NCBI RefSeq assembly: GCF_000143415.4
Contig: NW_003314492.1
Span: 1-30,535 of the forward strand
Direction of reading: 5' to 3'
Source: Selaginella moellendorffii
Taxonomy: Eukaryota > Plantae > Lycopodiophyta
DNA length: 30,535 nucleotides
A program made the translations under genes and the position numbers. Shown here piece by piece: positions 1-12,792 of the stretch (position 1 is the stretch's first letter; every line of letters begins with the position of its first letter). The notes beneath the pieces were generated by a model. That model saw only the letters and a list, made by a program, of their open reading frames with translations, had not been told where the DNA came from and searched no databases.

Positions 1-2
1 CC

Positions 3-390
3 GAATCTCACCTGGTAAGACCCAGTAATAAAAAACAAATGATATGGGTGGGGCGCTGCATCATTGATGCAGAGGAGGACGCGGAAACTAACTCCTTCAA
101 TGTAACTGTGGAGTGGTTCAAGCCAAGTTCCGGATATACGAAGGATTGCCTAGAAAAGAGATGGGTGCTGAATCCAAGGGATCCCAGCATGAGCATATCG
201 GTGGATAATGTTGTGCATGGTTGGATGCGGAAGCAGAGTGCCACCATCACCTTGCCAGACCATGCAAGAGATGCAGCAAGAGCATTCATAACCCGGGTTC
301 AAGGTGAGATTCATTAATATTCCTTTACTAAGTTTCTAATGTATTTTATTTCAAGGTGAACAATCCGAATCTGAATCAGAGGAGGCGTGA
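3..390 (+). CDS. 3' end of an unidentified spliced gene (possibly TE-associated); exons <3-303, 356-390
   Basis: The frame is open from the window edge (ESHLVRPSNKKQMIWVGRC...). A 52-nt GT-AG intron (304-355, AG|GTGAG...TCAAG) joins in frame to GEQSESESEEA*. No family recognised. Confidence 0.5.
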
Positions 391-1014
391 TGGCATGTGG
401 CCCTTTGCACTAGTATATCTTAATACCGGTCTGAGAAATAGAATGGCATGTGCCCTCAGGCCTTTTACTAAATCACCTTTGAAAGAAATGCAAGCCTCTA
501 TGTCGTAAAAAAAAGGTACTAGAGAAATTCCTTAATAATATGAATGTTATTTAGTTTCATGAAAATACACTAAGGGTCAAATGAGTTAAATGACTTCTCC
601 AGACTAGCAATGCCTCTTGCTACACCTTCACAATTAGATTCGTTAGAAAAAGATAACATTGAATAATATCTAAATGTTCTCACCATTAAGTTATATGTCT
701 GGCTAATAGGAATGACGTTCATCTTGGAAAGCTCACCACATGCTCAATGAACAAACAAATAGTGTGTGCGCGCATGCCATCGCTCTTCTTTAGCTTCAGA
801 TTCGGCTTGTTCACCTTGACAATGAGATTTATTATACAACCAAATGGACTCAGTCTGGACACAAAGTCACCGCGCTAGTCACCATGCCCTAGATATGTCT
901 AGCCCCTGGACAAAAAACATATAATTTCACGTCATTTTCAAATACTTGAAAATTTGTACCTAGTCCCATTTTACTGAATAAATCCCACTTTAACGAAATA
1001 GAGCTTATAGACCC

Positions 1015-1185
1015 AAGATGGAGTCCGAGATGGAGTCCAAAATGGATCTGAGATGGAGTCCGAAATGGAGTCCGAGATGGATCTGAGATAGAGTCTGAGA
1101 TGGAATCTGAGATGGACTTGAGATGGAGTCCGAGATGGAATCAAGACCGAAACTGAGACCCAGTCCGAGTCCAAGTCCAAGTTCG
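1015..1185 (+). repeat. Degenerate 11-12 bp tandem repeat (consensus GAGATGGAGTCC), about 11 units decaying into GAGTCC hexamers
   Basis: Visible units include aagatggagtcc, gagatggagtcc, aaaatggatctg, gaaatggagtcc and gagatggaatct. Confidence 0.9.
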
Positions 1186-2678
1186 AATACTAATACAGGC
1201 TATTGGGTGAAAGCCCAAAGCAATCGTTCCCTTGGGGGGGGGGAGCCTATAGGGGGTTCCAAAAGTATAGTAGGGAGAGTGTGGAGTTGGACCTAGTGGA
1301 GCCAATTTGGAGCTAGTTTGGCCTAGGAAGGATGTACCCAAGTGTTGGGTGATAGGATAACCACTAGGAAGTCTAAGGCTAGAGTGAATACGGAGTATCA
1401 AATGGGGTAACTTAATGAGGTGTTCAAGAGCCAGCTCTAGTTCCCCTGGGAGATTGAATGGTCAATGCTCCCAGTTCAAGTGTGAGTGGCACTACCTACT
1501 TGGATACTTAGTATGGCTCAACAGAACCTCGCTCTAAGCCCATGGCTAGAGCATCCAAAGGTGGAAGGTGGGGAGAGTACCCATGAGGCTTGTGTAAGGC
1601 CATGGTGTTCCGAAATGTTGTCCCAAAGTCCCAGACTGTGAAAAAAAGAGGAGTAGTCCTTTAGTGCAGTGACTAAAGATATGGTCACACAGTGAGGAAT
1701 CCCTAGAGGACAATGGGACTTAGAGGTCGGGCTTACAAGCCTTGTATTAATGGCAGAAACACGGCCATGGGGCAAAAGGGATTTAGTGGGGACTAAAACA
1801 GGGATATTGGGGAAGATTGTTCTCCATATCTGTGGGCATCCTAAAGATGTTAAAGAGTGGATATACGATGATCACTCATGGATAGATGGCCAAGTCTTAA
1901 AGAGACAGGACTATGATACATGTGGTATTGGACCACTGAATCTGGCGACGGAGCCTGGGCCTGGTCTTTAGCGAAACGCGCAAAGATGTCGGTGGTACCT
2001 TCGAGTGCCGGATCTGGCATCTAGCACGTGTGGCACTTGTACCAAGTGCAAAAGTCAAGTGTGCCTGGATGCCATTCTCGGGGCTAGCAAGCCCCAAAAT
2101 CGCTGAATTGGACTTATGGAGGTAGTAAATTAGACTCCTCCAAGTGGTTGAAGGTGTGGTTAAATGACTAAAGTAGAATGGAAAAATTAATCACTATTTT
2201 TATTCATAAACCCTTTCTCTTTATATTTGAACTACAATTGTTTGAGGGCATGAATGGAAGTTAAGAGGGCTCTCAACTCTCTAAACACCCTACTTCTTAA
2301 ATCTAACCCAACCAAAAAAAATTAAATTGCTAGATATCAATATTAATGATTCTTCTAACCAACTAATATAGTCAAATTTGAGACCTCTTTAATACCAAAT
2401 ATAAACTCATGAAATCAAAATTCCTAAAAGGACATAAAGCTTAATACTATTTAAACTCAAAAAACATGTAATCCTAAAATTTTTAAGACCTCTGCTAGAT
2501 GCATATGCCTAGGTGGGGCACCTTTAACTGAATAAAAAAAAATGCATTTTTATTTATGAACACCTTCCCTTCATATTTTGAACCATAATAAATTGTTTTT
2601 CAAATTGTTCTTTTTAGTGACTTACACAAAATAATGTAGTGTCAAATTTATAACATCTATAAAACAACACTCCCGTCA

Positions 2679-2748
2679 GTGGCACTTGTAGTGGAGCATA
2701 GGGTGGTGAGTTTACCACATGCTCCAAGCATCTACATAGGTGGCACTT
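2679..2748. repeat. 52-bp hairpin segment between 9-bp direct repeats (possible MITE/Mutator-like remnant)
   Basis: GTGGCACTT occurs at 2679-2687 and 2740-2748. Internal inverted arms are TGGAGCAT/ATGCTCCA and GTGGT/ACCAC. Confidence 0.5.
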
Positions 2749-3027
2749 AAGAGAAATCTTTTGCCAAAATACATTAATAATGGCTAACTATCAAAATGTT
2801 TGAGCTTATTTTATCCGATTCACATTTACGTTTTTTTAGAATGTTGCAGTTTATAGTAAAGCAATATAGCTTTAGAAATCATAAAATTTAGAAACTTTGA
2901 CTTAGGTACTTATATATTTCAATATTTTAAAGTTAATCTTAGGTTTTCTTTTTATAATTTGACAAACTCATAGGCTTGCTGTGTCAGCAGATGCCAAGTC
3001 AAGATATTCTAGGGAATCTAAAGAATA

Positions 3028-3618
3028 TTGCTGGGTGACGCTCTTATCACCCCCCTCGACAAAATCGGCAGCTTGAAGGGGAGCTTCATGGAAGAAGTGG
3101 GAAGGATTGCAGAAGCTAATGCTAGCCCTGGCAGAGAAGCATTGAGGCTTGTCGAAGTGCTGATTACGCCTTTCACTTTTGTGGCTTCTACATGCCTCCA
3201 ATCTGGAATCTCCCTCATCAAAGAAGATGCAACGCCAGTGGAAAAGGGGCGCTGCTTCCACTTTCTTCTCGCTGCAGCCATCTCAGTGATTGGATTAGCA
3301 TGGTGTCTAATAGCGATCGGTGAGAATGAACAAGGAAACACTTCTGAGGTCAAAAAGCTCATGATCTCTATTTGGATGATCTTCTTTATGAGCTTGTCCG
3401 TGATGATGACACCACTCTTTTTCAGCCTCCTCTACATTGTCTACGACGTTAGCAACATGATCGCAACGTGGTCAACCGTGGGTGCATTTTTACTTCTTGG
3501 AATTCTAATCTTCGTTACTTCCTTGAAAAAGTTGTTCCAAAGGATTCCACTGAGAGGAACTATTTTCGCCATCATCTTTCTTGCTAATGGGTATGGGTAC
3601 AGTCTATACAAAAAGTGA
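3028..3618 (+). CDS. Multi-pass membrane ORF of unknown family (start uncertain, possibly a pseudogene)
   Basis: 196-aa frame with no ATG at its start (first ATG at 3088) and several hydrophobic segments (FLLAAAISVIGLAWCLIAIG, IWMIFFMSLSVMMTPLFFSLLYIV, VGAFLLLGILIFV). A paralogous inverted copy lies at 4670-4875. Confidence 0.45.
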   Translation: MLGDALITPLDKIGSLKGSFMEEVGRIAEANASPGREALRLVEVLITPFTFVASTCLQSGISLIKEDATPVEKGRCFHFLLAAAISVIGLAWCLIAIGENEQGNTSEVKKLMISIWMIFFMSLSVMMTPLFFSLLYIVYDVSNMIATWSTVGAFLLLGILIFVTSLKKLFQRIPLRGTIFAIIFLANGYGYSLYKK

Positions 3619-4279
3619 AGAAAGAACACAAGAATTCCATTTCGTGTGGTAATCGCCTACAAAAAGTGTAAAAGAATTTCATTTCTTGTGGTAAAACATC
3701 CAAAAGCTTTTGTTTGTTCTAACTAGCAAGTCGCTGTCTCTCCCTGCGTTGGAGGATTCTTCTTGCTCTTGGATTTCTTGTCCTTTCTCCGCTTCTCCTT
3801 CACGTCCACCCAGGTGGAATCGGGGCCGTGATCGTCCGCCACCGCTGACGAGCTTGCCTGGCTGTGCCCGCGCTTGAGGAGCGTCGCCCTCCTTGGCTTC
3901 GCGTCTTTGGAGTGACGCGGACTCGAGTGGCGTGGAAAACTCCTCCGACGGCGTCTGATCTCATCAAAGCGAGTGAAAGTCACGACTGGCATGGTGCCAA
4001 GTCAAGAATTGATAGCAGGGGCGGAGGGAGGAAGATGGTGAGGAGGTGGAAATTTTGAAACTGCATGCCTTGCATTACATAATGTCTCATGCTTCTCGAT
4101 GTAGAAACAGAAGAGAGATAGATAGATAGTTCGTGGGCTGCAGCAACACCACGAGTGGGCGGCGGCGCCACCAGCGGCGCCGTTGGGCATAGATCACGGT
4201 GGTGCTTTCTCTCCTCCTCCTGACAGCCTCCAGCGCCTTGACCTTGTCCACTCTCCAAAGGCCACTCCACGCATCACGC

Positions 4280-4875
4280 TTACAAGCCCTGGCGCAGTGG
4301 TGCTCTGCCGATTGGAGTAGAGGCCGCCATGGATTCTCCCGCAAGGGCCTCAAAGTCAACTGGTAAGATTATCTTTCTTCTTCGTTTTTTCTCTAGATTT
4401 TGTTCTTGCCTGTATAGGTGCATCCAAAACAGCCAAGTTCTTGGCATATCACCCAGATGATCCGTGGATGTGAGCTCGATTTGCAGTTGTTCGCGGATTT
4501 TGCTCACGTTGGGGACGACGACGGCATTTTTGCTGGTGTGGTTCCAGGTATTTAAAAACTTGTATAGTTCATTTCGAGCTTGGGAAGTTTTCTCTTCACT
4601 TTTTCTTGATGGAGATGTTCCTTTGCTATGGAAGGATTGCCAGAAGCGTGGATGCTCAGTAGCCTGATTTAGACACCATGCCATACTGAGAAAGAAGTGG
4701 AAGCAACGCCCGTTTTCCGCTGCCATTGCATTCTCTTTGATTATGGAGATTGCCGACTCGAGGCAGGCAGGCCACAAAAGCGAAAGGCGTAATCAGCAAT
4801 TTTGAAACTCAAAAGTGATCAACATTACATATTCTTTAGATTCCCTGGAATGCCTTGACTCGGCATTTGCTGCAC
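4280..4875 (-). pseudogene. Inverted, frameshifted paralog of the 5' half of the 2980-3310 locus, fused to unrelated sequence
   Basis: CLESAISIIKENAMAAENGRCFHFFL aligns with CLQSGISLIKEDATPVEKGRCFHFLL, and ANAESRHSRESKEY aligns with ADAKSRYSRESKEY. Confidence 0.6.
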
Positions 4876-5032
4876 ACAAGTGACACAAGGTGTTCTGCAA
4901 CTTGCCACGATAAATAATCATATGTATGTTTTGTTCATACAAGTCAAGCTGATTCTGACATTTTGCTACATGAATAGCAACGGGAAACAAAACTTCGTGA
5001 TAAAACCAAATGGCAATTGAACATCTTTGATT

Positions 5033-5315
5033 TTATATGGGGATTTCATAATTTAGAAATAATTTCTTTGTGATTGGTCTTACATAATCCTGCAAGGTTG
5101 GTAGGCTGCTCGCTAGTGTTCTTACGATAAGCAGTTGCTCCACAGTCAGCCTCTTGCCCGGATCAACCTCCAACATCCAAATGATCAAACCCTGAGCCTC
5201 CCTCGACACACCCACGCTGTCTAAGGTATTCTGAGAACGGAACACTTCCCGGACAAGCTCATAGAGAATGAGCTCGAGGCCCCACAGAACCACATCTTGA
5301 GTGTAGTTGCTTGGC
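5033..5315 (-). pseudogene. Ser/Thr protein kinase C-terminal fragment (subdomains IX-XI, CAMK/CDPK-like), degenerate and truncated by a gap
   Basis: DVVLWGLELILYEL resembles D(V/I)WSxGVILYxL. VSREAQGLIIWMLEVDPGKRLTVEQLL resembles SxEAKDLIxxMLxxDPxxRLTAxQxL. Confidence 0.65.
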
Positions 5316-5640
5316 NNNNNNNNNNNNNNNNNNNNNNNNNNNNNNNNNNNNNNNNNNNNNNNNNNNNNNNNNNNNNNNNNNNNNNNNNNNNNNNNNNNNN
5401 NNNNNNNNNNNNNNNNNNNNNNNNNNNNNNNNNNNNNNNNNNNNNNNNNTTTGAGAAAACTATTAAGTTTCACTGTCTAGAGTTTGAAAGATTATGTAAT
5501 TTGAATATTTTAAGATATTATACATCTAATAAACATTGTTTATAAATTATTAATATAATTTATAAAACTAATAGTATTGTATAGACTCTTGCCAAATTAT
5601 TTTATTGTTGTTAATAATAAACTCTTAGGGTTTCAGGGCC

Positions 5641-6120
5641 ATGGTGAGGTTGAGCTCGCTCAACGATGCTGCGCGGCTGGGCAGGAAGAATGCGGTGATC
5701 AGGCCGTCGTCCAATCTGGTACTGAGGTTCCTGGAGGTGATGAAGAAGCAAGGTATGGGGATCGGATCGCTTTGGGTGATTGGAGTGTTTCCATGTCGAA
5801 GCAGGGTTTGTGGAAAATTTCCAGAGGCACGGCGGACACACTCCAGGGCACATCACCGTCGAGATCACGGACAAGCTCAAGAAATGCGTGCTGCTGTCGC
5901 AGCGATTTGATACGAAGTCGCGCAGGATCGATGCGTGGGCGAGACAAATTCTCCCAGCTCCAGAGGTAGAATAAGAAGTATGAATTTTCTTTATGCTAAA
6001 ATCCTTTTTTGTTCTTGGAAGGTTGGTCACCTTGTGATCACGAATTTCCTGGGTGTCATGGATCACCGAGAAGCCAAGAAAAAGAACCTTGGTGGCCGGA
6101 TTTTGGGATACTTCTACTGA
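5641..6120 (+). CDS. RPS15A: Divergent 40S ribosomal protein S15a (uS8 family), 123 aa; exons 5641-5752, 5805-5965, 6022-6120
   Basis: Spliced product: MVRLSSLNDAARLGRKNAVIRPSSNLVLRFLEVMKKQGFVENFQ...KKCVLLSQRFD...QILPAPEVGHLVITNFLGVMDHREAKKKNLGGRILGYFY*. It matches the S15a motifs IRPSS and MDHxEA..GG.LGFFY. Two GT-AG introns (52 and 56 nt) keep the frame. Confidence 0.9.
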
Positions 6121-6193
6121 TTTGGGATCGAATTTTCTGTGGCAAGATCGAGGGAGCTTTGGATCAATCGGAGGGACAAAAACCCCAGCTTTC

Positions 6194-7818
6194 TCAAGCA
6201 AAGTTTGTGAGGACTTTTTTCACGAGATGTTCACCGTAGACGACTGGCTTCTCCTCCTCCTTAGAGTTTCCAAGACAAAAACTTAAAGGCTCCACCTTTG
6301 TATCGAAATTTGGCTGGAAAAGAAAAAAGTTTGTCAAAAGTACACACCAAAAACTTTAACCTCGTAGAAAAANNNNNNNNNNNNNNNNNNNNNNNNNNNN
6401 NNNNNNNNNNNNNNNNNNNNNNNNNNNNNNNNNNNNNNNNNNNNNNNNNNNNNNNNNNNNNNNNNNNNNNNNNNNNNNNNNNNNNNNNNNNNNNNNNNNN
6501 NNNNNNNNNNNNNNNNNNNNNNNNNNNNNNNNNNNNNNNNNNNNNNNNNNNNNNNNNNNNNNNNNNNNNNNNNNNNNNNNNNNNNNNNNNNNNNNNNNNN
6601 NNNNNNNNNNNNNNNNNNNNNNNNNNNNNNNNNNNNNNNNNNNNNNNNNNNNNNNNNNNNNNNNNNNNNNNNNNNNNNNNNNNNNNNNNNNNNNNNNNNN
6701 NNNNNNNNNNNNNNNNNNNNNNNNNNNNNNNNNNNNNNNNNNNNNNNNNNNNNNNNNNNNNNNNNNNNNNNNNNNNNNNNNNNNNNNNNNNNNNNNNNNN
6801 NNNNNNNNNNNNNNNNNNNNNNNNNNNNNNNNNNNNNNNNNNNNNNNNNNNNNNNNNNNNNNNNNNNNNNNNNNNAATCTTTCGGAGGATAACCAATGAC
6901 TCGCAGTATCCAGAATGGATCCCCAGCTCTGGAGGCCTCAAAAGTGTCAGCTTCGCCACCCAAAGCCAGTGCTACCCCTCGGAATATCGCCTTTGACAGT
7001 GCTACAAAGAAAAAGAGAAACGAGAGACATAAACTTTTTGCCAGAAAGAAACTGTTTACCTCGCAATTGATCAACGTAATCCTCCATCACTGCACGAAAA
7101 CGCTTTGGATTCTCTGGCCTACGAGAAGAGAACGAAATGAAACCAAGATTAACTGCTGCTGGAGCTTTCTACCTTGGTGTTTACCATTGGTTTGGACCCA
7201 TCACCGTTTTTGCGAGTTCTAGATCCTGGATCTCTGGTCCAAATTCTCGAAAGTACTGCCAAAGGAGAAATTTCCCTGAGCATGAAAGCTTCGTCAACTT
7301 CAATGGAAACCTTACATCAATGGCTTCGTGACAGTCGTGCATGCCATACGATACGTTTTCTCCAAGCTTTTGGTATCCCCTGGTTGAAAAAAAAAACTAA
7401 GAACGAGGATTTCTACCCAGCTCTTTACCGATAGCCGCTGGAAGGAGTCATCTTGATTCGCATTTTCTCACAGTCTGGAAGCTTGAAAAATTCGTGGCTT
7501 AAACTCCGGACGTCGTCCATAAGCTCCCGAGAGACGCCATGGCCTGTCTGAAAGAAAAAAGGAGCGAGAAATTTGCTTGAATTCCGTGAAAGTAGATCGA
7601 TCGATCGATCGCGAGAGTCTAAATCGTACCGCGTAGAAGAAGCCAATGTTCCTGCAAGCGTGATCGAGCTGCTCGATCACGTCTCTCACATCCGGAAAAG
7701 CGCCAAGGCCGGGATCATCGAATCGCCTCACCAGTGGCTCCACATCTGGAAAAACGCAAGCGTGATAGATGGAAATCTTGCGCGCGCGAGAGGAATTTGG
7801 GAGCGTACCGATTGTAGG
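6194..7818 (-). CDS. 2-oxoglutarate/Fe(II)-dependent dioxygenase, DIN11/2-ODD-C23-like; start and catalytic exons lie in N-gaps
   Basis: Exons: <7818-7809, 7745-7630, 7547-7429, 7379-7316, 7255-7185, 7118-7060, 7001->6877, <6372-6361, 6313-6194. Motifs include LDHACRNIGFFYA|TGHGVS, SGYRGYQKLGENV, HEAID, GPNQWP, GDPFWILRVIGYP, FYEPNFDTKVEPL and VVYGEHLVKKVLTNF*. Confidence 0.9.
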
Positions 7819-8890
7819 NNNNNNNNNNNNNNNNNNNNNNNNNNNNNNNNNNNNNNNNNNNNNNNNNNNNNNNNNNNNNNNNNNNNNNNNNNNNNNNNNN
7901 NNNNNNNNNNNNNNNNNNGCGCCATAGCCAGACGATGCCGCTGAATATGCCCTAGATAGAATATTCGTTATTTTGGTGTCTGTAAGCCCTAATATTAGTT
8001 CCTTTCAACCCTTGTAATGAGGATGAAAATCTCTTTACTAGATTGAGTAATTATTTTGATTAACTAAAGCTACAGATTTTAGTATCTCTTGTTGTCATAG
8101 CTTCTAAGGTGACCTCTAAAACAATCCAAGCTTATCCAGCCTAAGCCTCCATGATGACAACCCAAAACATGTATTATAACTAAGAAATGTACTGCAAACA
8201 GGTGTTTAATTAAAGTATATTTTACTTAATTATTTTAAACTAATCTGATACTGCAAATGCATTGTTTGTGGTCCCAAATTGCTCCTTTTCAGTGAATTAT
8301 TGTCAAAGACAAGCCCATGCCTGGTAGAAACACTGTGATGAGATAGCTGTAAAAGAAAAATAGCCTCAGTGTAAGTTCTGCAAGCCTTACCACAAACTGA
8401 TGTCTGCCACTTAAAAGTACTACTTGGACAAAGTTTCAAATTAAACTCCCACGTGGCATCATCGCCGTCGCCCGTTCTCACACTCAACGGCTGCGATCCG
8501 CCCAGGCGCCAGACTGTTGGTGTCAGTCGTGAAACAGTTTAAAAACAATTTTCCCGCATTAAAAAAGTTTTTTTACTCTTGTTCAAAAACACTGGGACCA
8601 ATAAACTACCCGGGAAAAATCCCGGAAATTTGATTTTCCCCAGTGTGAAAGCGCCCTCTCATATCGTGGGTTTCAGCGTGGCCGTCGGATGGAGGGCATC
8701 GACGGCCAGGATGGGGCCACCGAGGCGGGAAAATAAAGGGCAATGGAGTCTAGTTAGCGTCTCTCGTGTGTTCTTCGAGCGTGTGTGAAAGAGTGAGAGC
8801 ACCGAAAGCTTTGGAGAGAGTTTTCATTGCATGTGAAAGCTCTTGGGGATTTTTATTTCGAGTTCCAGGCTCCAGCAGCGGTGAGGAGGA

Positions 8891-8914
8891 GCGGCGGCGG
8901 CGGCGGCGGCGGCG
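8891..8914 (+). repeat. (GCG)n microsatellite, about 8 units, upstream of the ZF-HD gene
   Basis: gcggcggcggcggcggcggcggcg is directly visible. Confidence 0.85.
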
Positions 8915-9762
8915 CTCGATTTCACGGCGATGGCGCTTGCTCCAGGTGATGCGGTGCTGGATCGATCGATCTAGCCCCGCGTCGTGCAGCCGGCGGGGCT
9001 TGGTAGGAGCCGAATCGCCACTTCGCAAGCGCTGTGTCGGTAATATTAATTGCTGCTGCTGCTCGATCTCTCCTCGTTTGCTTTCTTCCATATTTCGATC
9101 GATCTCTTCCCGCTGTGCTTGATTTCTCGTCGTGCGTCAGTGCTGTGGGGACCAGGAGTGTGGATTTCTTTTTTCTTTCTCTCGCTTTTCTCTCTCAAGT
9201 GATCTAGCCAGTGTTTTAGCTCGATAGTCTCCTCGCAGTTCTTCCAAAACCCTGCCAGTCTTTTTTTTCCTTGACATTCCTCCTCCATACATAACAAATC
9301 TCCCTTCTTTTCCTTCTCTCCTCATCCCTGAGAGTTTAAAAAATCTGGTGTGCCAGTTTCTGTTTGTCTGTCTGCTTCCACTCCCTTCTTCTCTCTCTTC
9401 ATCATCGAAATTCCTGTGCTGCGCTTATCCTAAGCTGGGTTGGCTCTCAAATCTCCTAAGAGGCGGCCTAGCAGCAGCGAACTGGAATCCCACGATCATG
9501 CTCAGACGTGCTGGCAGGAGTAATGTCCGGTGTAGCTAGCTGGGCCGAAGCAGGGAAGAGGGTAGTGAGTAGCTCCTGAGGATGACGAGATCTAGCAGAT
9601 GGCAGGAGGCAGGCAATCTGGAAAGCTTTGGGCACAGGTTATAGACTCGAGAAGATGGTGGCTGTAGCTCAGTGACCGCAAAGTCATCTCTAAAGTTCCA
9701 AGCTAGCACGACTCAGCAGGCAGGTAGCCACTGATCACTCTCGAGGACCACTCTCGAGAGCA

Positions 9763-10461
9763 ATGGATTTGGGTGGCCATGAAGAAGACATTCCCATTCC
9801 AATTTCAGCGCAGTTCAGTGCCGCGGCGATACACGAGACTGCAGCCAAGCTCAAGCTCCTGGCGAGTGGGAATGGAACGCCAGCGGCTCAAGTGGGAAGC
9901 GGCGCTGCAGTCGTAGTCGTCTCCGGAGAGGCGGGGGCGGCGGCGGCGGCGGCAGGGGGTGACAGCAAAAGCAAGCGTCCAGTGAGGTACACGCAGTGCT
10001 TGAAGAACCACGCCGCGGGTATCGGCGGGCACGCTCTGGATGGGTGTGGAGAATTTATGCCGTGCGGAGAGGAAGGGACGCTGGATGCTCTCAAGTGCGC
10101 TGCCTGTGACTGCCACCGCAACTTCCACCGGCGGGAGGTGGAGGGCGAGCCCTCTTGCCTCGAGTGCCACCACCGGAAGGACAAGAAGCGGCTCATGCTG
10201 CCGTCGAGATCAGGGGAGCTGGACGATCAAGGAGTCTACATGCCAAACGCTGGAGGGCCTAATCTCAAAAAGAGGTTTAGGACGAAGTTCACGGGAGACC
10301 AAAAGGAGAGGATGCTGGCATTTGCGGATAAGGTGGGCTGGAAGATCCAGAAGCACGACGAGGCCGAGGTCCAGCAGTTTTGTAACGAGGTGGGCGTCAA
10401 GCGTCACGTCCTCAAGGTGTGGATGCACAACAACAAGCACACGCTGGGGAAGAAGATGTAA
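9763..10461 (+). CDS. Zinc finger-homeodomain (ZF-HD/ZHD) transcription factor, single coding exon, 232 aa
   Basis: ZF-HD dimerisation domain [24 protein letters not shown]...[14 protein letters not shown] and atypical homeodomain KKRFRTKFT...[10 protein letters not shown]. Confidence 0.97.
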
Positions 10462-12792
10462 GCTGGCCAGCCGGGGGGGGGATCATATATCTCAAGAGGT
10501 TTCCTCGTCTTCTTTTAGTCGCTTCGTTTGAGAGGTACATTGTTTTCTTTCTCTCCATTTTACTTTGCATTCTCAACTCTAGCTTTTGTCTGTGGGGAAG
10601 CTGCAGCGAGAAACGCTTCAGGTTCTACCGCAGGGTTTTCTTTTAAAAACTTGACTCTCACCAGGCAAGAAAAGCATTCACTTGCTGATCAGAATTCCTT
10701 ATGTTTTCGTTTGGCTTTCGCCATTCCACGCTCTAACGTTTTTGTAATTACATGTTCTAGGTGGTGCTACTGCTACCTGTTTATGTTCTAAAGACTCGCT
10801 CTCGCTCCCGCTCCCAGGTGTATCTCGTGCATGCGTCTCTTAAAGTTTGGGTGCGTTCTCGGCTCGCTGCGAGAGGGAATGAGATCTCTTCGGTAGGAAC
10901 TTTCGGTAGGAACTTTGTTGAGCTTTCATTCTGTTTGTCTCTGCTGCTTGCTTCGCTTCAGGAACCCTTCGTTGGTTTTTCCATCTTGGTTTCAAAGCTT
11001 GGTGTGGTGATGATCAGCTGAGTTTCTTCTCTTCACTCTGACGTTTCCGGCAGCACGCCTTCGCTGCCTTGTACACTGTTCCGGAGGCGTGAAGGTGGAA
11101 ATCAAATCCAATGCTCCAGACTGGACGCGGCGGTGCAGCACACTTCATCATTTTCGGCATCAGACACCGAGACGGAGAGCGAGCAACAAAAGGTGACTGT
11201 TTTTTTCCTCTCGTTTTCTTTCGAGCGTTTTAAATGAACGTTTAATTCGATCAAAGTCTTCCCGAGCTGCTAATTCAGTTGTTGCTTTCCTTCGCAGAGA
11301 GAGCTTTAATCGCACATGTTTGGACGATGTATTAATGCACAGCTTACAAAAGGGTCGACGGAACGGACCCCGGGCCCCGGCTTGCCAGGCAGGGAAAGGA
11401 CTGTCTGTGCTCACTTGAAATTTTGGTTTCAGGTGATTGTCATGCACGAGACCTGGCTGGCTGCTGGCTGCAACAGCGCTCTGCACCACCACCTCATTGG
11501 AAAACGCAAAGGTTCTCCCTCTCTCTCATCTCGTTTTCTTTTGCAATTTTTTTCCACGATTTACCTTTTGCTTTTCGGGTGTAGGAGTGTGACCCTGACA
11601 CACCGTCGCTTTCTCTGGCCGCACCGCAACAGCGTCTCGCTGCACTGCCACCGCCACAACCATTTGCTAGCTCGGACAGCTACGCGGCTAGGCTGCTTTG
11701 TCCCGTAAGTTTCAAGTAAGATAAGCTGGTGGCTAACTCTTCCCGCGCATAAATCCGTCCTATCAGGTCAGAGCTGCATACTTTGCATCGTTATTCTTGT
11801 GCCCGGCATTCGCATCGGATCCTGCCTGTGTTCTGTGAGACCTTCCAGCTTTTGCACTGTACTGATCTTTGCTGGCCTTTCGAGGGTTGGCCGATTGGAG
11901 AAAAGAAAGAGAAAGTGAGTAGCAAATCATGGTGAGCGTGTCGTGCGTGTGCTGGAAGTGCTGCTGCTTGTAGCGATGTGGGATATCACAGATTTCTTTT
12001 AAGCCCAGGTGTGGTGGTGGTTGCTCCCGCTCATGATGCTAAATCCATGAACTCATGACACACGCACAATAAACAACGGCTAAGCTCCTTCGCTCAGGTC
12101 AGTAATTGTCAAGTCGTTGTTTTGTTTTTAAGTCGATTGGATCTGATGGTCTCGCGCGCAGCCGACAAGAGTGGTAGCTAAAGATCAGCCAAACGAACCC
12201 CGGCGACCCGAGCAAGCTGGAGCTAGTAACGGACTACCTGAATGTAAGTAAAAGTAGCTATGCCGGCTTTGTTTTGTACTTATAGATGGTTTTCTTGTTG
12301 CTCCAGTAGCTGGCCAGCCAGAGCTGGACTGGATGGACGAACCAAAAGCAAAAAAAAAAAAAAGAAACGCTGCCTCGCTCAATCAACTTCACAGCTTTAA
12401 TAGGTAAATTCTAGTTTTGCTCCACTGGATTATTAAAGTAATCCATGCGTTTGTGACGTGATCGTGGGGTGGTACAAATTCAACCACACTAACCACTGCC
12501 ATGTTCTCTCGCCAGGACTCGTATAATCTCGGACGCGAGAGGGCAGCAGCAACAACAAGAACGAATAAAATAGGAGGTATTTGTCGTATGGTTTGTAGGA
12601 CAGGCTTTTTCCTCCCCACAAAAAGATCTGATTCGCCACAGTGGTGCTGGTGGTGGTGTGGTGTTCTTCGCAGGGAAACACAGCGAGAGAGAAAGAGAGA
12701 GAAATAATATAAAAGAGCCAAAAGAGTCAGATTTCTAGAAGATCCCGGGCAGCGAGCGGGTGTTTGCGAAGAGCACTTGCGTGTTTTCCGGG

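What the first reader, a model, noticed from the sequence alone, without database searches (positions are those of the whole stretch)
5641..6120. Highly divergent but intact RPS15a: candidate mitoribosomal uS8 replacement
Seen: an intact 3-exon, 123-aa S15a with clean splice sites, many substitutions and about 7 residues missing after LNDA. Cytosolic S15a is normally nearly invariant. The segment GFVENFQ..HITVEI is closer to my recollection of angiosperm type-II S15a (GYIKNFQ..RITVDL) than to the cytosolic form (GYIGEFE..KIVVEL). Established: seed plants replaced mitochondrial rps8 with a diverged cytosolic S15a duplicate, and Selaginella mtDNA is reported to lack ribosomal protein genes. Inference: this may be an orthologous or independent recruitment to the mitoribosome in a non-seed plant.
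Basis: partly seen in the sequence, partly recalled or inferred. Interest (0 to 1): 0.72.

Follow-up and report, generated by a model that had tools for sequence, protein, structure and literature searches.

The report
Spikemoss divergent S15a: likely mitoribosomal uS8
The spikemoss Selaginella moellendorffii keeps an expressed, selectively constrained but very diverged extra copy of cytosolic ribosomal protein S15a (uS8). It most likely supplies the mitochondrial ribosome, as a similar copy does in flowering plants, but its location is untested and a 2026 preprint already places this swap at the base of vascular plants.

Summary
Window 5641-6120 (+) holds a 3-exon, 123-aa uS8/S15a gene: SELMODRAFT_432268 of Selaginella moellendorffii, scaffold GL377796.1. 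Its GT..AG introns are 52 and 56 nt, and about 7 residues are missing from the N-terminal helix.

- **Divergence:** it is 42% identical to canonical plant S15a, which is at least 92% identical among the angiosperms sampled, and 36-41% identical to angiosperm mitoribosomal type II S15a (uS8m).
- **Alive, not decaying:** RNA contigs from four studies splice intron 2, and one run splices both introns. The two haplotypes differ by 4 synonymous and 0 non-synonymous changes (P about 0.003). The predicted fold is a confident uS8 fold. The window's only telo-box, a promoter motif of cytosolic and mitochondrial ribosomal protein genes, lies in its 5'UTR.
- **Orthology unresolved:** grouping with type II was best or tied in every likelihood test but never significant.
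- **Context:** Selaginella mtDNA has no ribosomal protein genes. An October 2026 preprint states that a cytosolic uS8 paralog replaced uS8m in Tracheophyta.

Verdict: probably Selaginella's uS8m, a new member of a known kind. Localisation, a canonical S15a copy and absence of a bacterial-type uS8m were not tested.

The parts
5617..5640 (+). 5' UTR; the transcript start is near 5617
   Evidence: A contig of run X8 begins at 5617 directly after 25 nt of sequencing adapter. Positions 5585-5666 are identical between the two haplotypes, while the AT-rich DNA upstream is full of indels.
5625..5633 (-). Telo-box AAACCCTAA, 8 nt upstream of the ATG
   Evidence: This is the only match in the 30.5-kb window; 0.34 are expected by chance. 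Telo-boxes near the start codon mark cytosolic and mitochondrial, but not plastid, ribosomal protein genes in land plants, S. moellendorffii included (PMC3212954).
5641..5752 (+). Exon 1 CDS (residues 1-37 plus the first base of Gly38)
   Evidence: It encodes the shortened N-terminal helix and the IRPSS motif shared with canonical S15a.
5753..5804 (+). Intron 1: 52 nt, GT..AG, phase 1, 52% G+C, with a NAGNAG acceptor
   Evidence: It is spliced in the X8 contig and retained in the X1, X4 and X5 contigs. The alternative acceptor 3 nt upstream gives the 124-aa model P0126. The position matches that in a canonical Populus S15a gene and in type II genes.
5805..5965 (+). Exon 2 CDS (residues 38-91)
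   Evidence: It contains the type-II-like segment GFVENFQ..HITVEI.
5966..6021 (+). Intron 2: 56 nt, GT..AG, phase 0, 27% G+C
   Evidence: It is spliced out in contigs of all four runs laid, from four studies. The position matches canonical and type II genes.
6022..6120 (+). Exon 3 CDS (residues 92-123 plus TGA); C-terminal RNA-binding part of uS8
   Evidence: This piece alone hits PF00410 at 26.7 bits. It keeps the family-invariant T98, G102, D105, H106, A109, G115 and G116.
6121..6372 (+). 3' UTR, running into the assembly gap at 6373
   Evidence: RNA contigs cover up to 6369 and continue beyond it into sequence missing from the window. This stretch overlaps the 3' end of a convergent 2OG-Fe(II) oxygenase gene.

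Best explanation
This is a nuclear, DNA-level duplicate of the cytosolic ribosomal protein gene S15a (uS8). It has left the cytosolic ribosome's near-absolute sequence constraint and now evolves under a new one. Most likely it is Selaginella's mitoribosomal uS8m. On that reading the protein is made in the cytosol, imported without a long cleavable extension as Arabidopsis type II S15a is, and binds the central-domain uS8 site of the fast-evolving mitochondrial small-subunit rRNA. It would stand in for the bacterial-type rps8 that vascular-plant mtDNAs have lost.

Shown here: the gene structure, its transcription and splicing, purifying selection between haplotypes, a retained uS8 fold and core RNA-binding residues, a ribosomal-protein-type promoter motif, and the type-II-like segment.

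Inferred: the mitochondrial location and the role in the mitoribosome. Whether it descends from the same duplication as seed-plant type II S15a is unresolved, though slightly favoured.
For: - **Family and origin.** P0001 is a uS8 of archaeal/eukaryotic type, not bacterial. Pfam PF00410 scores 55.8 bits. NCBIfam NF003115 scores 102.6 bits against 41.7 for the bacterial model. The best PDB hits are cytosolic uS8 chains. Both intron positions are identical to those of a canonical Populus S15a gene and of type II genes.
- **Too diverged for the cytosolic role.** It is 42% identical to canonical S15a. It differs at 18 of the 55 positions that canonical and type II copies share.
- **Still constrained.** The two haplotypes differ by 4 synonymous and 0 non-synonymous changes. 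P is 0.003 from site proportions and 0.004 from the 1.96% divergence of introns plus 3'UTR. The AlphaFold model has pLDDT 89.6 and TM 0.92 to plant uS8. 28 columns are invariant across P0001, type II and canonical copies.
- **Expressed.** 20 of the 24 listed runs, from 7 studies, hold the stretch or part of it (15 hold at least half of its words). Spliced contigs were laid from 4 studies.
- **Promoter motif.** A telo-box lies in the 5'UTR. This motif marks cytosolic and mitochondrial, but not plastid, ribosomal protein genes, in this species too.
- **Type II likeness.** Residues 34-62 hit only plant uS8m-type chains. They share MK, NFQ, H and ITV where canonical S15a has MQ, EFE, D and IVV.
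- **Phylogeny.** The topology P0001 + type II was best or tied-best in all five AU tests, and it had UFBoot 87 in the first tree.
- **Need for a replacement.** S. moellendorffii mtDNA has no rps/rpl genes. mt rps8 is also absent from Isoetes and Cycas mtDNA and is not in the Huperzia gene list.
- **Precedent.** Arabidopsis uS8m is AT4G29430/AT2G19720, both type II S15a (PDB 6xyw_Bg, 9evs_G). The preprint 10.64898/2026.10.06.756942 places the swap at Tracheophyta.
Against: - There are no localisation, import or proteomic data.
- Over its full length P0001 scores higher against cytosolic uS8 (115 bits) than against plant uS8m (92-96 bits).
- It keeps canonical states where type II differs: MVR at the start, IRPSS and MDH. 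The strict counts are 8 positions matching canonical only and 6 matching type II only.
- Monophyly with type II is never significant, and the second unconstrained tree does not recover it.
- Two long branches could attract each other and inflate the grouping.
- In 3 of 4 RNA runs the assembled isoform retains intron 1, which would give a truncated 89-aa product.
- I could not exclude a second, more conventional type II copy or a nuclear bacterial-type uS8m in the same genome.
- No orthologue in another lycophyte was found.
Confidence: 0.6

Rival explanations
1. Same function (mitoribosomal uS8m), but by an independent duplication of canonical S15a in the lycophyte or Selaginella lineage. The type-II-like residues would then be convergent adaptations to the mitoribosome. 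This rival concerns the gene's history only and is nested inside the best explanation.
For: P0001 keeps canonical-specific states where all type II copies differ: MVR at the start, IRPSS and MDH. The topology with P0001 outside a (type II + angiosperm canonical) group is only 0.2-1.5 lnL worse than the best, with p-AU 0.12-0.53. The N-terminal indels differ: 7 aa here against 1 aa in type II. Nothing in the type II word-sharing set is closer to P0001 than 41%.
Against: The topology P0001 + type II is best or tied in every test, including under LG+C20. The shared NFQ/H/ITV hairpin segment points the same way. The preprint assigns the event to the tracheophyte stem. mt rps8 is already missing from the otherwise archaic Huperzia mtDNA.
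Confidence: 0.27
2. A specialised paralog of the cytosolic ribosome, or an extraribosomal protein, with no mitochondrial role.
For: P0001 has no N-terminal extension. Its full-length similarity is highest to cytosolic uS8. The telo-box fits a cytosolic ribosomal protein gene equally well.
Against: Cytosolic uS8 is almost invariant, yet P0001 changes 58% of positions and loses two turns of helix 1. That is hard to fit into the same 18S rRNA and protein environment. Type II S15a also lacks an extension and is still mitoribosomal. No case is known to me of a cytosolic uS8 this divergent working in an 80S ribosome.
Confidence: 0.15
3. A duplicate on its way to being lost: transcribed but no longer useful.
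For: It has a very long branch, with 18 changes at positions otherwise conserved across the family. The frame-shifting intron 1 is retained in 3 of 4 assembled runs. No orthologue was found elsewhere.
Against: The ORF is intact on both haplotypes with 4 synonymous and 0 non-synonymous differences (P about 0.003). 13 of the 18 unusual changes are conservative (BLOSUM score 0 or higher). The fold is predicted with confidence. The 5'UTR and telo-box are conserved between haplotypes. A fully spliced mRNA contig exists.
Confidence: 0.07
4. A replacement for plastid uS8c rather than for the mitochondrial protein.
For: Selaginella plastomes have lost many ribosomal protein genes. I could not establish whether plastid rps8 is retained.
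Against: There is no transit-peptide-like extension. Telo-boxes are not enriched in plastid ribosomal protein genes. The preprint lists plastid replacements for Selaginella and lycophytes (uL33, uS15) but not uS8.
Confidence: 0.04

Closest known systems
Type II S15a / uS8m of flowering plants (Arabidopsis RPS15aB AT2G19720 and RPS15aE AT4G29430; PDB 6xyw chain Bg, 9evs chain G)
   Same: Both are diverged duplicates of cytosolic S15a with no long presequence. Both have the same 3-exon structure and intron positions. They share the MK..NFQ.H...G.ITV hairpin segment. Both occur in a lineage whose mtDNA lacks rps8.
   Different: P0001 is only 36-41% identical to type II. It lacks the type II hallmarks GYIKNF, DPHRVG, ALTYRQD, LPTRQW and TTPDG. 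It has 123 aa with a 7-aa deletion, against 129 aa with a 1-aa deletion. It is even further from canonical S15a (42%) than type II is (49-53%). Monophyly with type II is not demonstrated. Its location is untested.
Canonical cytosolic S15a / uS8 (type I; e.g. PDB 8auv chain e, 9h3g chain AE)
   Same: Same fold (TM 0.92) and the same archaeal/eukaryotic-type lineage. It shares the MVR start, IRPSS and MDH motifs, the same intron positions, and a telo-box-type promoter element.
   Different: 58% of residues differ, whereas canonical copies are at least 92% identical across the angiosperms sampled. Helix 1 is shortened by about two turns. The acidic EFE motif is replaced by NFQ.
Bacterial-type mitochondrial rps8 (encoded in Marchantia mtDNA)
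   Same: The presumed function: the uS8 position of the mitoribosomal small subunit.
   Different: The evolutionary origin is different. P0001 scores 102.6 bits on the archaeal/eukaryotic model and only 41.7 on the bacterial one.

Membership tests
Ribosomal protein uS8 (Pfam PF00410) | Profile match above the curated cut-off | tested here: met
   55.8 bits against a cut-off of 24, covering residues 4-123.
Ribosomal protein uS8 (Pfam PF00410) | Two-domain alpha/beta uS8 fold with conserved C-terminal RNA-binding residues | tested here: met
   AlphaFold pLDDT is 89.6 and pTM 0.83. TM is 0.92 to plant cytosolic uS8 and 0.87-0.89 to plant uS8m. T98, G102, D105, H106, A109, G115 and G116 are invariant with the family.
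Eukaryotic/archaeal-type S15a lineage (as opposed to bacterial or organellar rps8) | Closer to the archaeal/eukaryotic model than to the bacterial one; gene structure shared with nuclear S15a | tested here: met
   NF003115 scores 102.6 bits and NF001109 41.7 bits; both are below NCBI's equivalog cut-offs. The intron positions and phases equal those of canonical Populus S15a and of type II genes.
Canonical cytosolic S15a (type I) | Near-invariant sequence (at least 92% identity among the angiosperm copies sampled; about 78% plant to mammal) | tested here: not met
   42% identity to plant canonical S15a and 39.5% to Bos, plus a 7-aa deletion.
Type II S15a / uS8m (seed plants) | Monophyly with type II sequences | tested here: inconclusive
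   This topology was best or tied in all AU tests, with delta lnL 0.2-1.5 and alternatives at p 0.12-0.53. UFBoot was 87 in one tree, and the group was absent in another.
Type II S15a / uS8m (seed plants) | Diagnostic motifs conserved from Amborella to eudicots and monocots (GYIK[ND]F, D[PM]HRVG, AL[TM]YRQD, LPT[RH]QWGY, TTP[DN]G, NVGGQVLG) and a length of 129 aa | tested here: not met
   Only NFQ, one H, ITV, VIT and GYF- are shared. The strict counts are 6 positions equal to type II only and 8 equal to canonical only. The length is 123 aa.
Type II S15a / uS8m (seed plants) | Mitochondrial import and presence in the mitoribosome | not testable with these tools
   This needs GFP or import assays, or mitoribosome proteomics or cryo-EM. 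It has been shown only for Arabidopsis and another flowering plant (PDB 6xyw, 9evs).
Type II S15a / uS8m (seed plants) | No mitochondrion-encoded rps8 in the same organism | tested here: met
   From the literature only. Hecht 2011 reports no rps/rpl genes in S. moellendorffii mtDNA. A nuclear bacterial-type copy was not searched for.

The most novel reading that the evidence does not exclude
Selaginella recruited its own, separately duplicated cytosolic S15a to the mitoribosome. On this reading the NFQ/ITV hairpin changes it shares with seed-plant uS8m are convergent solutions to fitting an archaeal-type uS8 onto a bacterial-type rRNA. This would be a natural replicate of an inter-compartment ribosomal protein swap.
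Probability: 0.27. Interest if true: 0.6.

Novelty: new member of a known kind. Interest (0 to 1): 0.38.

Why it matters
Replacement of an organellar ribosomal protein by a retargeted cytosolic paralog is a rare, well-defined kind of molecular tinkering. It was first shown for rps8/S15a in flowering plants. Selaginella is an extreme test case: its mtDNA encodes no ribosomal proteins, no tRNAs and no 5S rRNA, is very GC-rich and is heavily edited.

If this gene is its uS8m, it is by far the most diverged eukaryotic-type uS8 among the plant sequences compared here. It would show how far the protein can drift while tracking a fast-evolving mitochondrial rRNA. It would also help date the swap to the tracheophyte stem or reveal a second, convergent swap.

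The general claim is already in the literature, so the specific gain is modest. It consists of a concrete gene model, evidence of expression and selection, and a clear statement that orthology with seed-plant type II is not yet demonstrated.

Tried and rejected
- **Pfam on single exons.** Only exon 3 matched. This was superseded by the scan of the full protein.
- **Word-index search with P0001.** Only 14 candidates came up and it found only itself. P0001 shares almost no 5-residue words with any relative.
- **Exhaustive search with exon 2 alone.** The spliced protein had no reference, so I used the 53-aa exon. It gave 5 hits and mainly served to return P0001 as a citable id. A 53-aa query is too short to say anything about absence of relatives.
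- **Search with canonical S15a.** The best 120 hits were all angiosperm type I. No type II and no Selaginella copy was visible.
- **Getting type II sequences.** I scanned JGI metagenome contigs with a degenerate pattern for the type II motif seen. This returned 25 plant contigs, which were used as references.
- **Profile of P0001 plus tiny type II fragments.** The fragments misaligned in local tests. A safer version with two C-terminal fragments worked but showed nothing closer to P0001 than angiosperm type II. Three Logan proteins that looked unusual proved to be N-truncated or asterid-like angiosperm type II.
- **ESM Atlas look-alikes.** Generic uS8 clusters only, so uninformative.
- **Fold search.** It cannot separate cytosolic from mitoribosomal uS8.
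- **Intron positions.** They are the same in canonical, type II and P0001 genes. They show duplication at the DNA level but say nothing on orthology.
- **Papers.** Adams et al. 2002 (PMC150693) is not held. Two lycophyte plastome papers do not mention rps8, so the plastid rival could not be closed that way.
- **Tests not run.** A canonical S15a and a bacterial-type uS8m in the same genome could not be looked for.

Full report
**What is in the sequence**

Joining 5641-5752, 5805-5965 and 6022-6120 on the + strand gives a 372-nt ORF of 123 codons plus TGA. The two introns are 52 and 56 nt, both GT..AG.

The product equals database protein P0001, which is SELMODRAFT_432268 / XP_024527238 / D8TFH4 of Selaginella moellendorffii. 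The window is the entire 30,535-bp scaffold GL377796.1 of assembly GCA_000143415.2.

The protein is a bona fide uS8:
- Pfam PF00410 scores 55.8 bits against a cut-off of 24.
- It is of archaeal/eukaryotic type rather than bacterial type: 102.6 against 41.7 bits.
- AlphaFold2, run with a 25-sequence alignment, gives pLDDT 89.6 and pTM 0.83, with helix 1 only nine residues long.
- The model superposes on plant cytosolic uS8 at TM 0.92 and on plant mitoribosomal uS8m at 0.87-0.89.

**How unusual it is**

Canonical S15a copies from the 24 angiosperms sampled are 92-100% identical to one another and about 78% identical to cattle. P0001 is 42% identical to them. It is 36-41.5% identical to angiosperm type II S15a, which is itself 49-53% identical to canonical.

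P0001 lacks seven residues in the N-terminal helix. The gap can be placed after LNDA or after MVR at about equal cost.

At 55 positions canonical and type II agree with each other. P0001 keeps 37 of these and changes 18, and 13 of the 18 changes are conservative. Twenty-eight columns are invariant across all three groups, including the C-terminal T98, G102, D105, H106, A109, G115 and G116.

Neither the word-index search with P0001 nor the exhaustive search with exon 2 found anything closer. The same holds for a profile search seeded with type II words and ranked mostly by likeness to P0001. The best hit there was angiosperm uS8m at 41% identity.

**Is it alive?**

*Transcription.*
- 20 of the 24 listed public runs, from 7 studies, hold the stretch or part of it; 15 hold at least half of its sampled words.
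- I laid contigs of four runs from four studies. All four skip exactly 5966-6021, so they are RNA-derived. One run (X8) also skips 5753-5804 and yields the full ORF.
- The other three runs carry intron 1 unspliced. That shifts the frame and would give an 89-aa product.
- Intron 1 is 52% G+C, while intron 2 is 27% G+C and is always spliced. Its acceptor is a NAGNAG, which explains the alternative 124-aa model P0126.
- An adapter-joined contig places the 5' end near 5617.

*Selection.*
- The gene is present on two further scaffolds. GL377617.1 is identical to the window. GL377572.1 is the other haplotype.
- The haplotypes differ at four CDS positions, all synonymous, and at none of about 282 non-synonymous sites.
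- The probability of that under neutrality is 0.003 from site proportions. It is 0.004 using the 1.96% divergence of the introns plus 3'UTR.

*Regulation.*
- The only telo-box (AAACCCTAA) in the window lies at 5625-5633, inside the 5'UTR.
- That stretch is identical between haplotypes, whereas the DNA further upstream is riddled with indels.
- Wang et al. 2011 (PMC3212954) report telo-boxes enriched near the start codon of cytosolic and mitochondrial, but not plastid, ribosomal protein genes, in S. moellendorffii too.

**Which ribosome?**

Residues 34-62 alone hit only the three plant uS8m-type chains among uS8 chains in the PDB (9evs_G, 6xyw_Bg, 8ip8_va). In this segment P0001 shares MK, NFQ, H and ITV with them, where canonical S15a has MQ, EFE, D and IVV.

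Over its full length, however, P0001 scores higher against cytosolic uS8 (115 bits) than against uS8m (92-96 bits). It also keeps MVR, IRPSS and MDH, which type II has lost.

To test orthology I needed type II sequences by reference. A degenerate-pattern scan of JGI metagenome contigs returned 25 plant contigs with Arabidopsis-, Salicaceae- and grass-like type II genes. The last protein search added named type II proteins from Amborella to eudicots.

The three groupings compared in the likelihood tests were:

| Label | Grouping |
|---|---|
| H1 | P0001 with type II |
| H2 | P0001 outside a (type II + angiosperm canonical) group |
| H3 | P0001 with canonical |

The results were:
- The first maximum-likelihood tree joined P0001 to type II (SH-aLRT 73, UFBoot 87), with two very long branches of 1.36 and 1.18 substitutions per site.
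- In AU tests H1 was best or tied every time, but only by 0.2-1.5 lnL. The alternatives had p-AU 0.12-0.53.
- This held under LG+G4 and LG+C20+G4, with and without the ambiguous N-terminus.
- H3 was marginally rejected in one analysis only (p 0.046).
- A second unconstrained tree with more type II taxa did not recover the P0001 + type II grouping.

Orthology with seed-plant type II is therefore mildly favoured and unproven. Long-branch attraction would push in the same direction.

Intron positions are identical in canonical, type II and P0001 genes. This shows a DNA-level duplication but does not help decide orthology.

**Context from papers**
- Hecht et al. 2011 (PMC5654404) report that S. 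moellendorffii mtDNA has no rps or rpl genes. In their table mt rps8 is present only in Marchantia, is a pseudogene in a hornwort, and is absent from Physcomitrella, Isoetes, Selaginella and Cycas.
- The otherwise gene-rich Huperzia mtDNA does not list rps8 (PMC3325193).
- Arabidopsis uS8m is AT4G29430/AT2G19720, both type II S15a (PMC6953067; PMC3585428).
- A preprint of October 2026 (10.64898/2026.10.06.756942) analysed 85 eukaryotes, including three Selaginella species. It states that a paralog of cytosolic uS8 replaced uS8m in Tracheophyta. Its tree is in a supplement that I could not read. P0001 is in EukProt, so it may be one of their sequences.

**Verdict**

The most likely reading, at about 0.6, is that this is Selaginella's mitoribosomal uS8m. 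About 0.27 of that is an independent, convergent recruitment; in the rest the copy is orthologous to seed-plant type II.

The lesser rivals are:
- a specialised cytosolic or extraribosomal paralog (0.15);
- a decaying duplicate (0.07), disfavoured by the selection, fold and promoter evidence;
- a plastid role (0.04).

This is a new member of a known kind, and the general claim is already published. The specific contribution here is the verified gene model, the expression and selection evidence, the intron-1 retention caveat, and the finding that orthology is not yet demonstrable from sequence.

Not tested: subcellular location, a canonical S15a copy and a bacterial-type uS8m in the same genome, and dN/dS against congeners.

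Noticed in passing
window 5753-5804: Intron 1 (52 nt, 52% G+C, NAGNAG acceptor) is retained in the assembled transcripts of 3 of 4 RNA runs, while the AT-rich intron 2 is always spliced. Retention shifts the frame and gives an 89-aa product. This could be inefficient splicing or regulated unproductive splicing, as is known for ribosomal protein genes.
   Followed up: partly
window 5625-5633 (-): The single telo-box AAACCCTAA of the whole scaffold sits 8 nt upstream of the ATG, in a stretch identical between haplotypes. It fits co-regulation with cytosolic and mitochondrial ribosomal protein genes.
   Followed up: partly
window 1-12120 compared with L027 (GL377617.1) and L028 (GL377572.1): Over the 920 bp compared (5451-6370), the scaffold matches GL377617.1 at all but one position (6370), with the same neighbouring genes, so it looks like a redundant copy in the assembly. 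GL377572.1 is the other haplotype. The AT-rich 130 bp upstream of 5585 differs between haplotypes by several indels of 8-32 bp.
   Followed up: partly
window 6194-9091 (-): A convergent 2OG-Fe(II) oxygenase gene (DIOX_N) ends inside the S15a-like gene's 3'UTR. RNA contigs run on from 6369 into sequence missing from the window (gap 6373-6875). One 1468-nt contig probably spans both genes.
   Followed up: no
PDB 8ip8 chain va: The uS8 chain deposited in a wheat 80S (cytosolic) ribosome entry has a type II (uS8m-like) sequence: 129 aa with GYIKNF..DPHRVG..ITVEL. This is either a paralog chosen by mistake during model building or a hint that type II can sit in 80S ribosomes.
   Followed up: no
L001-L025 (JGI metagenome contigs): Environmental 'metagenome' records contain plain plant nuclear DNA and cDNA: Arabidopsis-, Salicaceae- and grass-like type II S15a genes. 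Several Salicaceae-like copies are intronless ORFs, which may be cDNA or retrocopies.
   Followed up: no
P0003: The 50%-identity cluster representative for canonical plant S15a is a 255-aa head-to-tail fusion of two S15a units. It is probably a gene-model artefact over a tandem duplicate.
   Followed up: no
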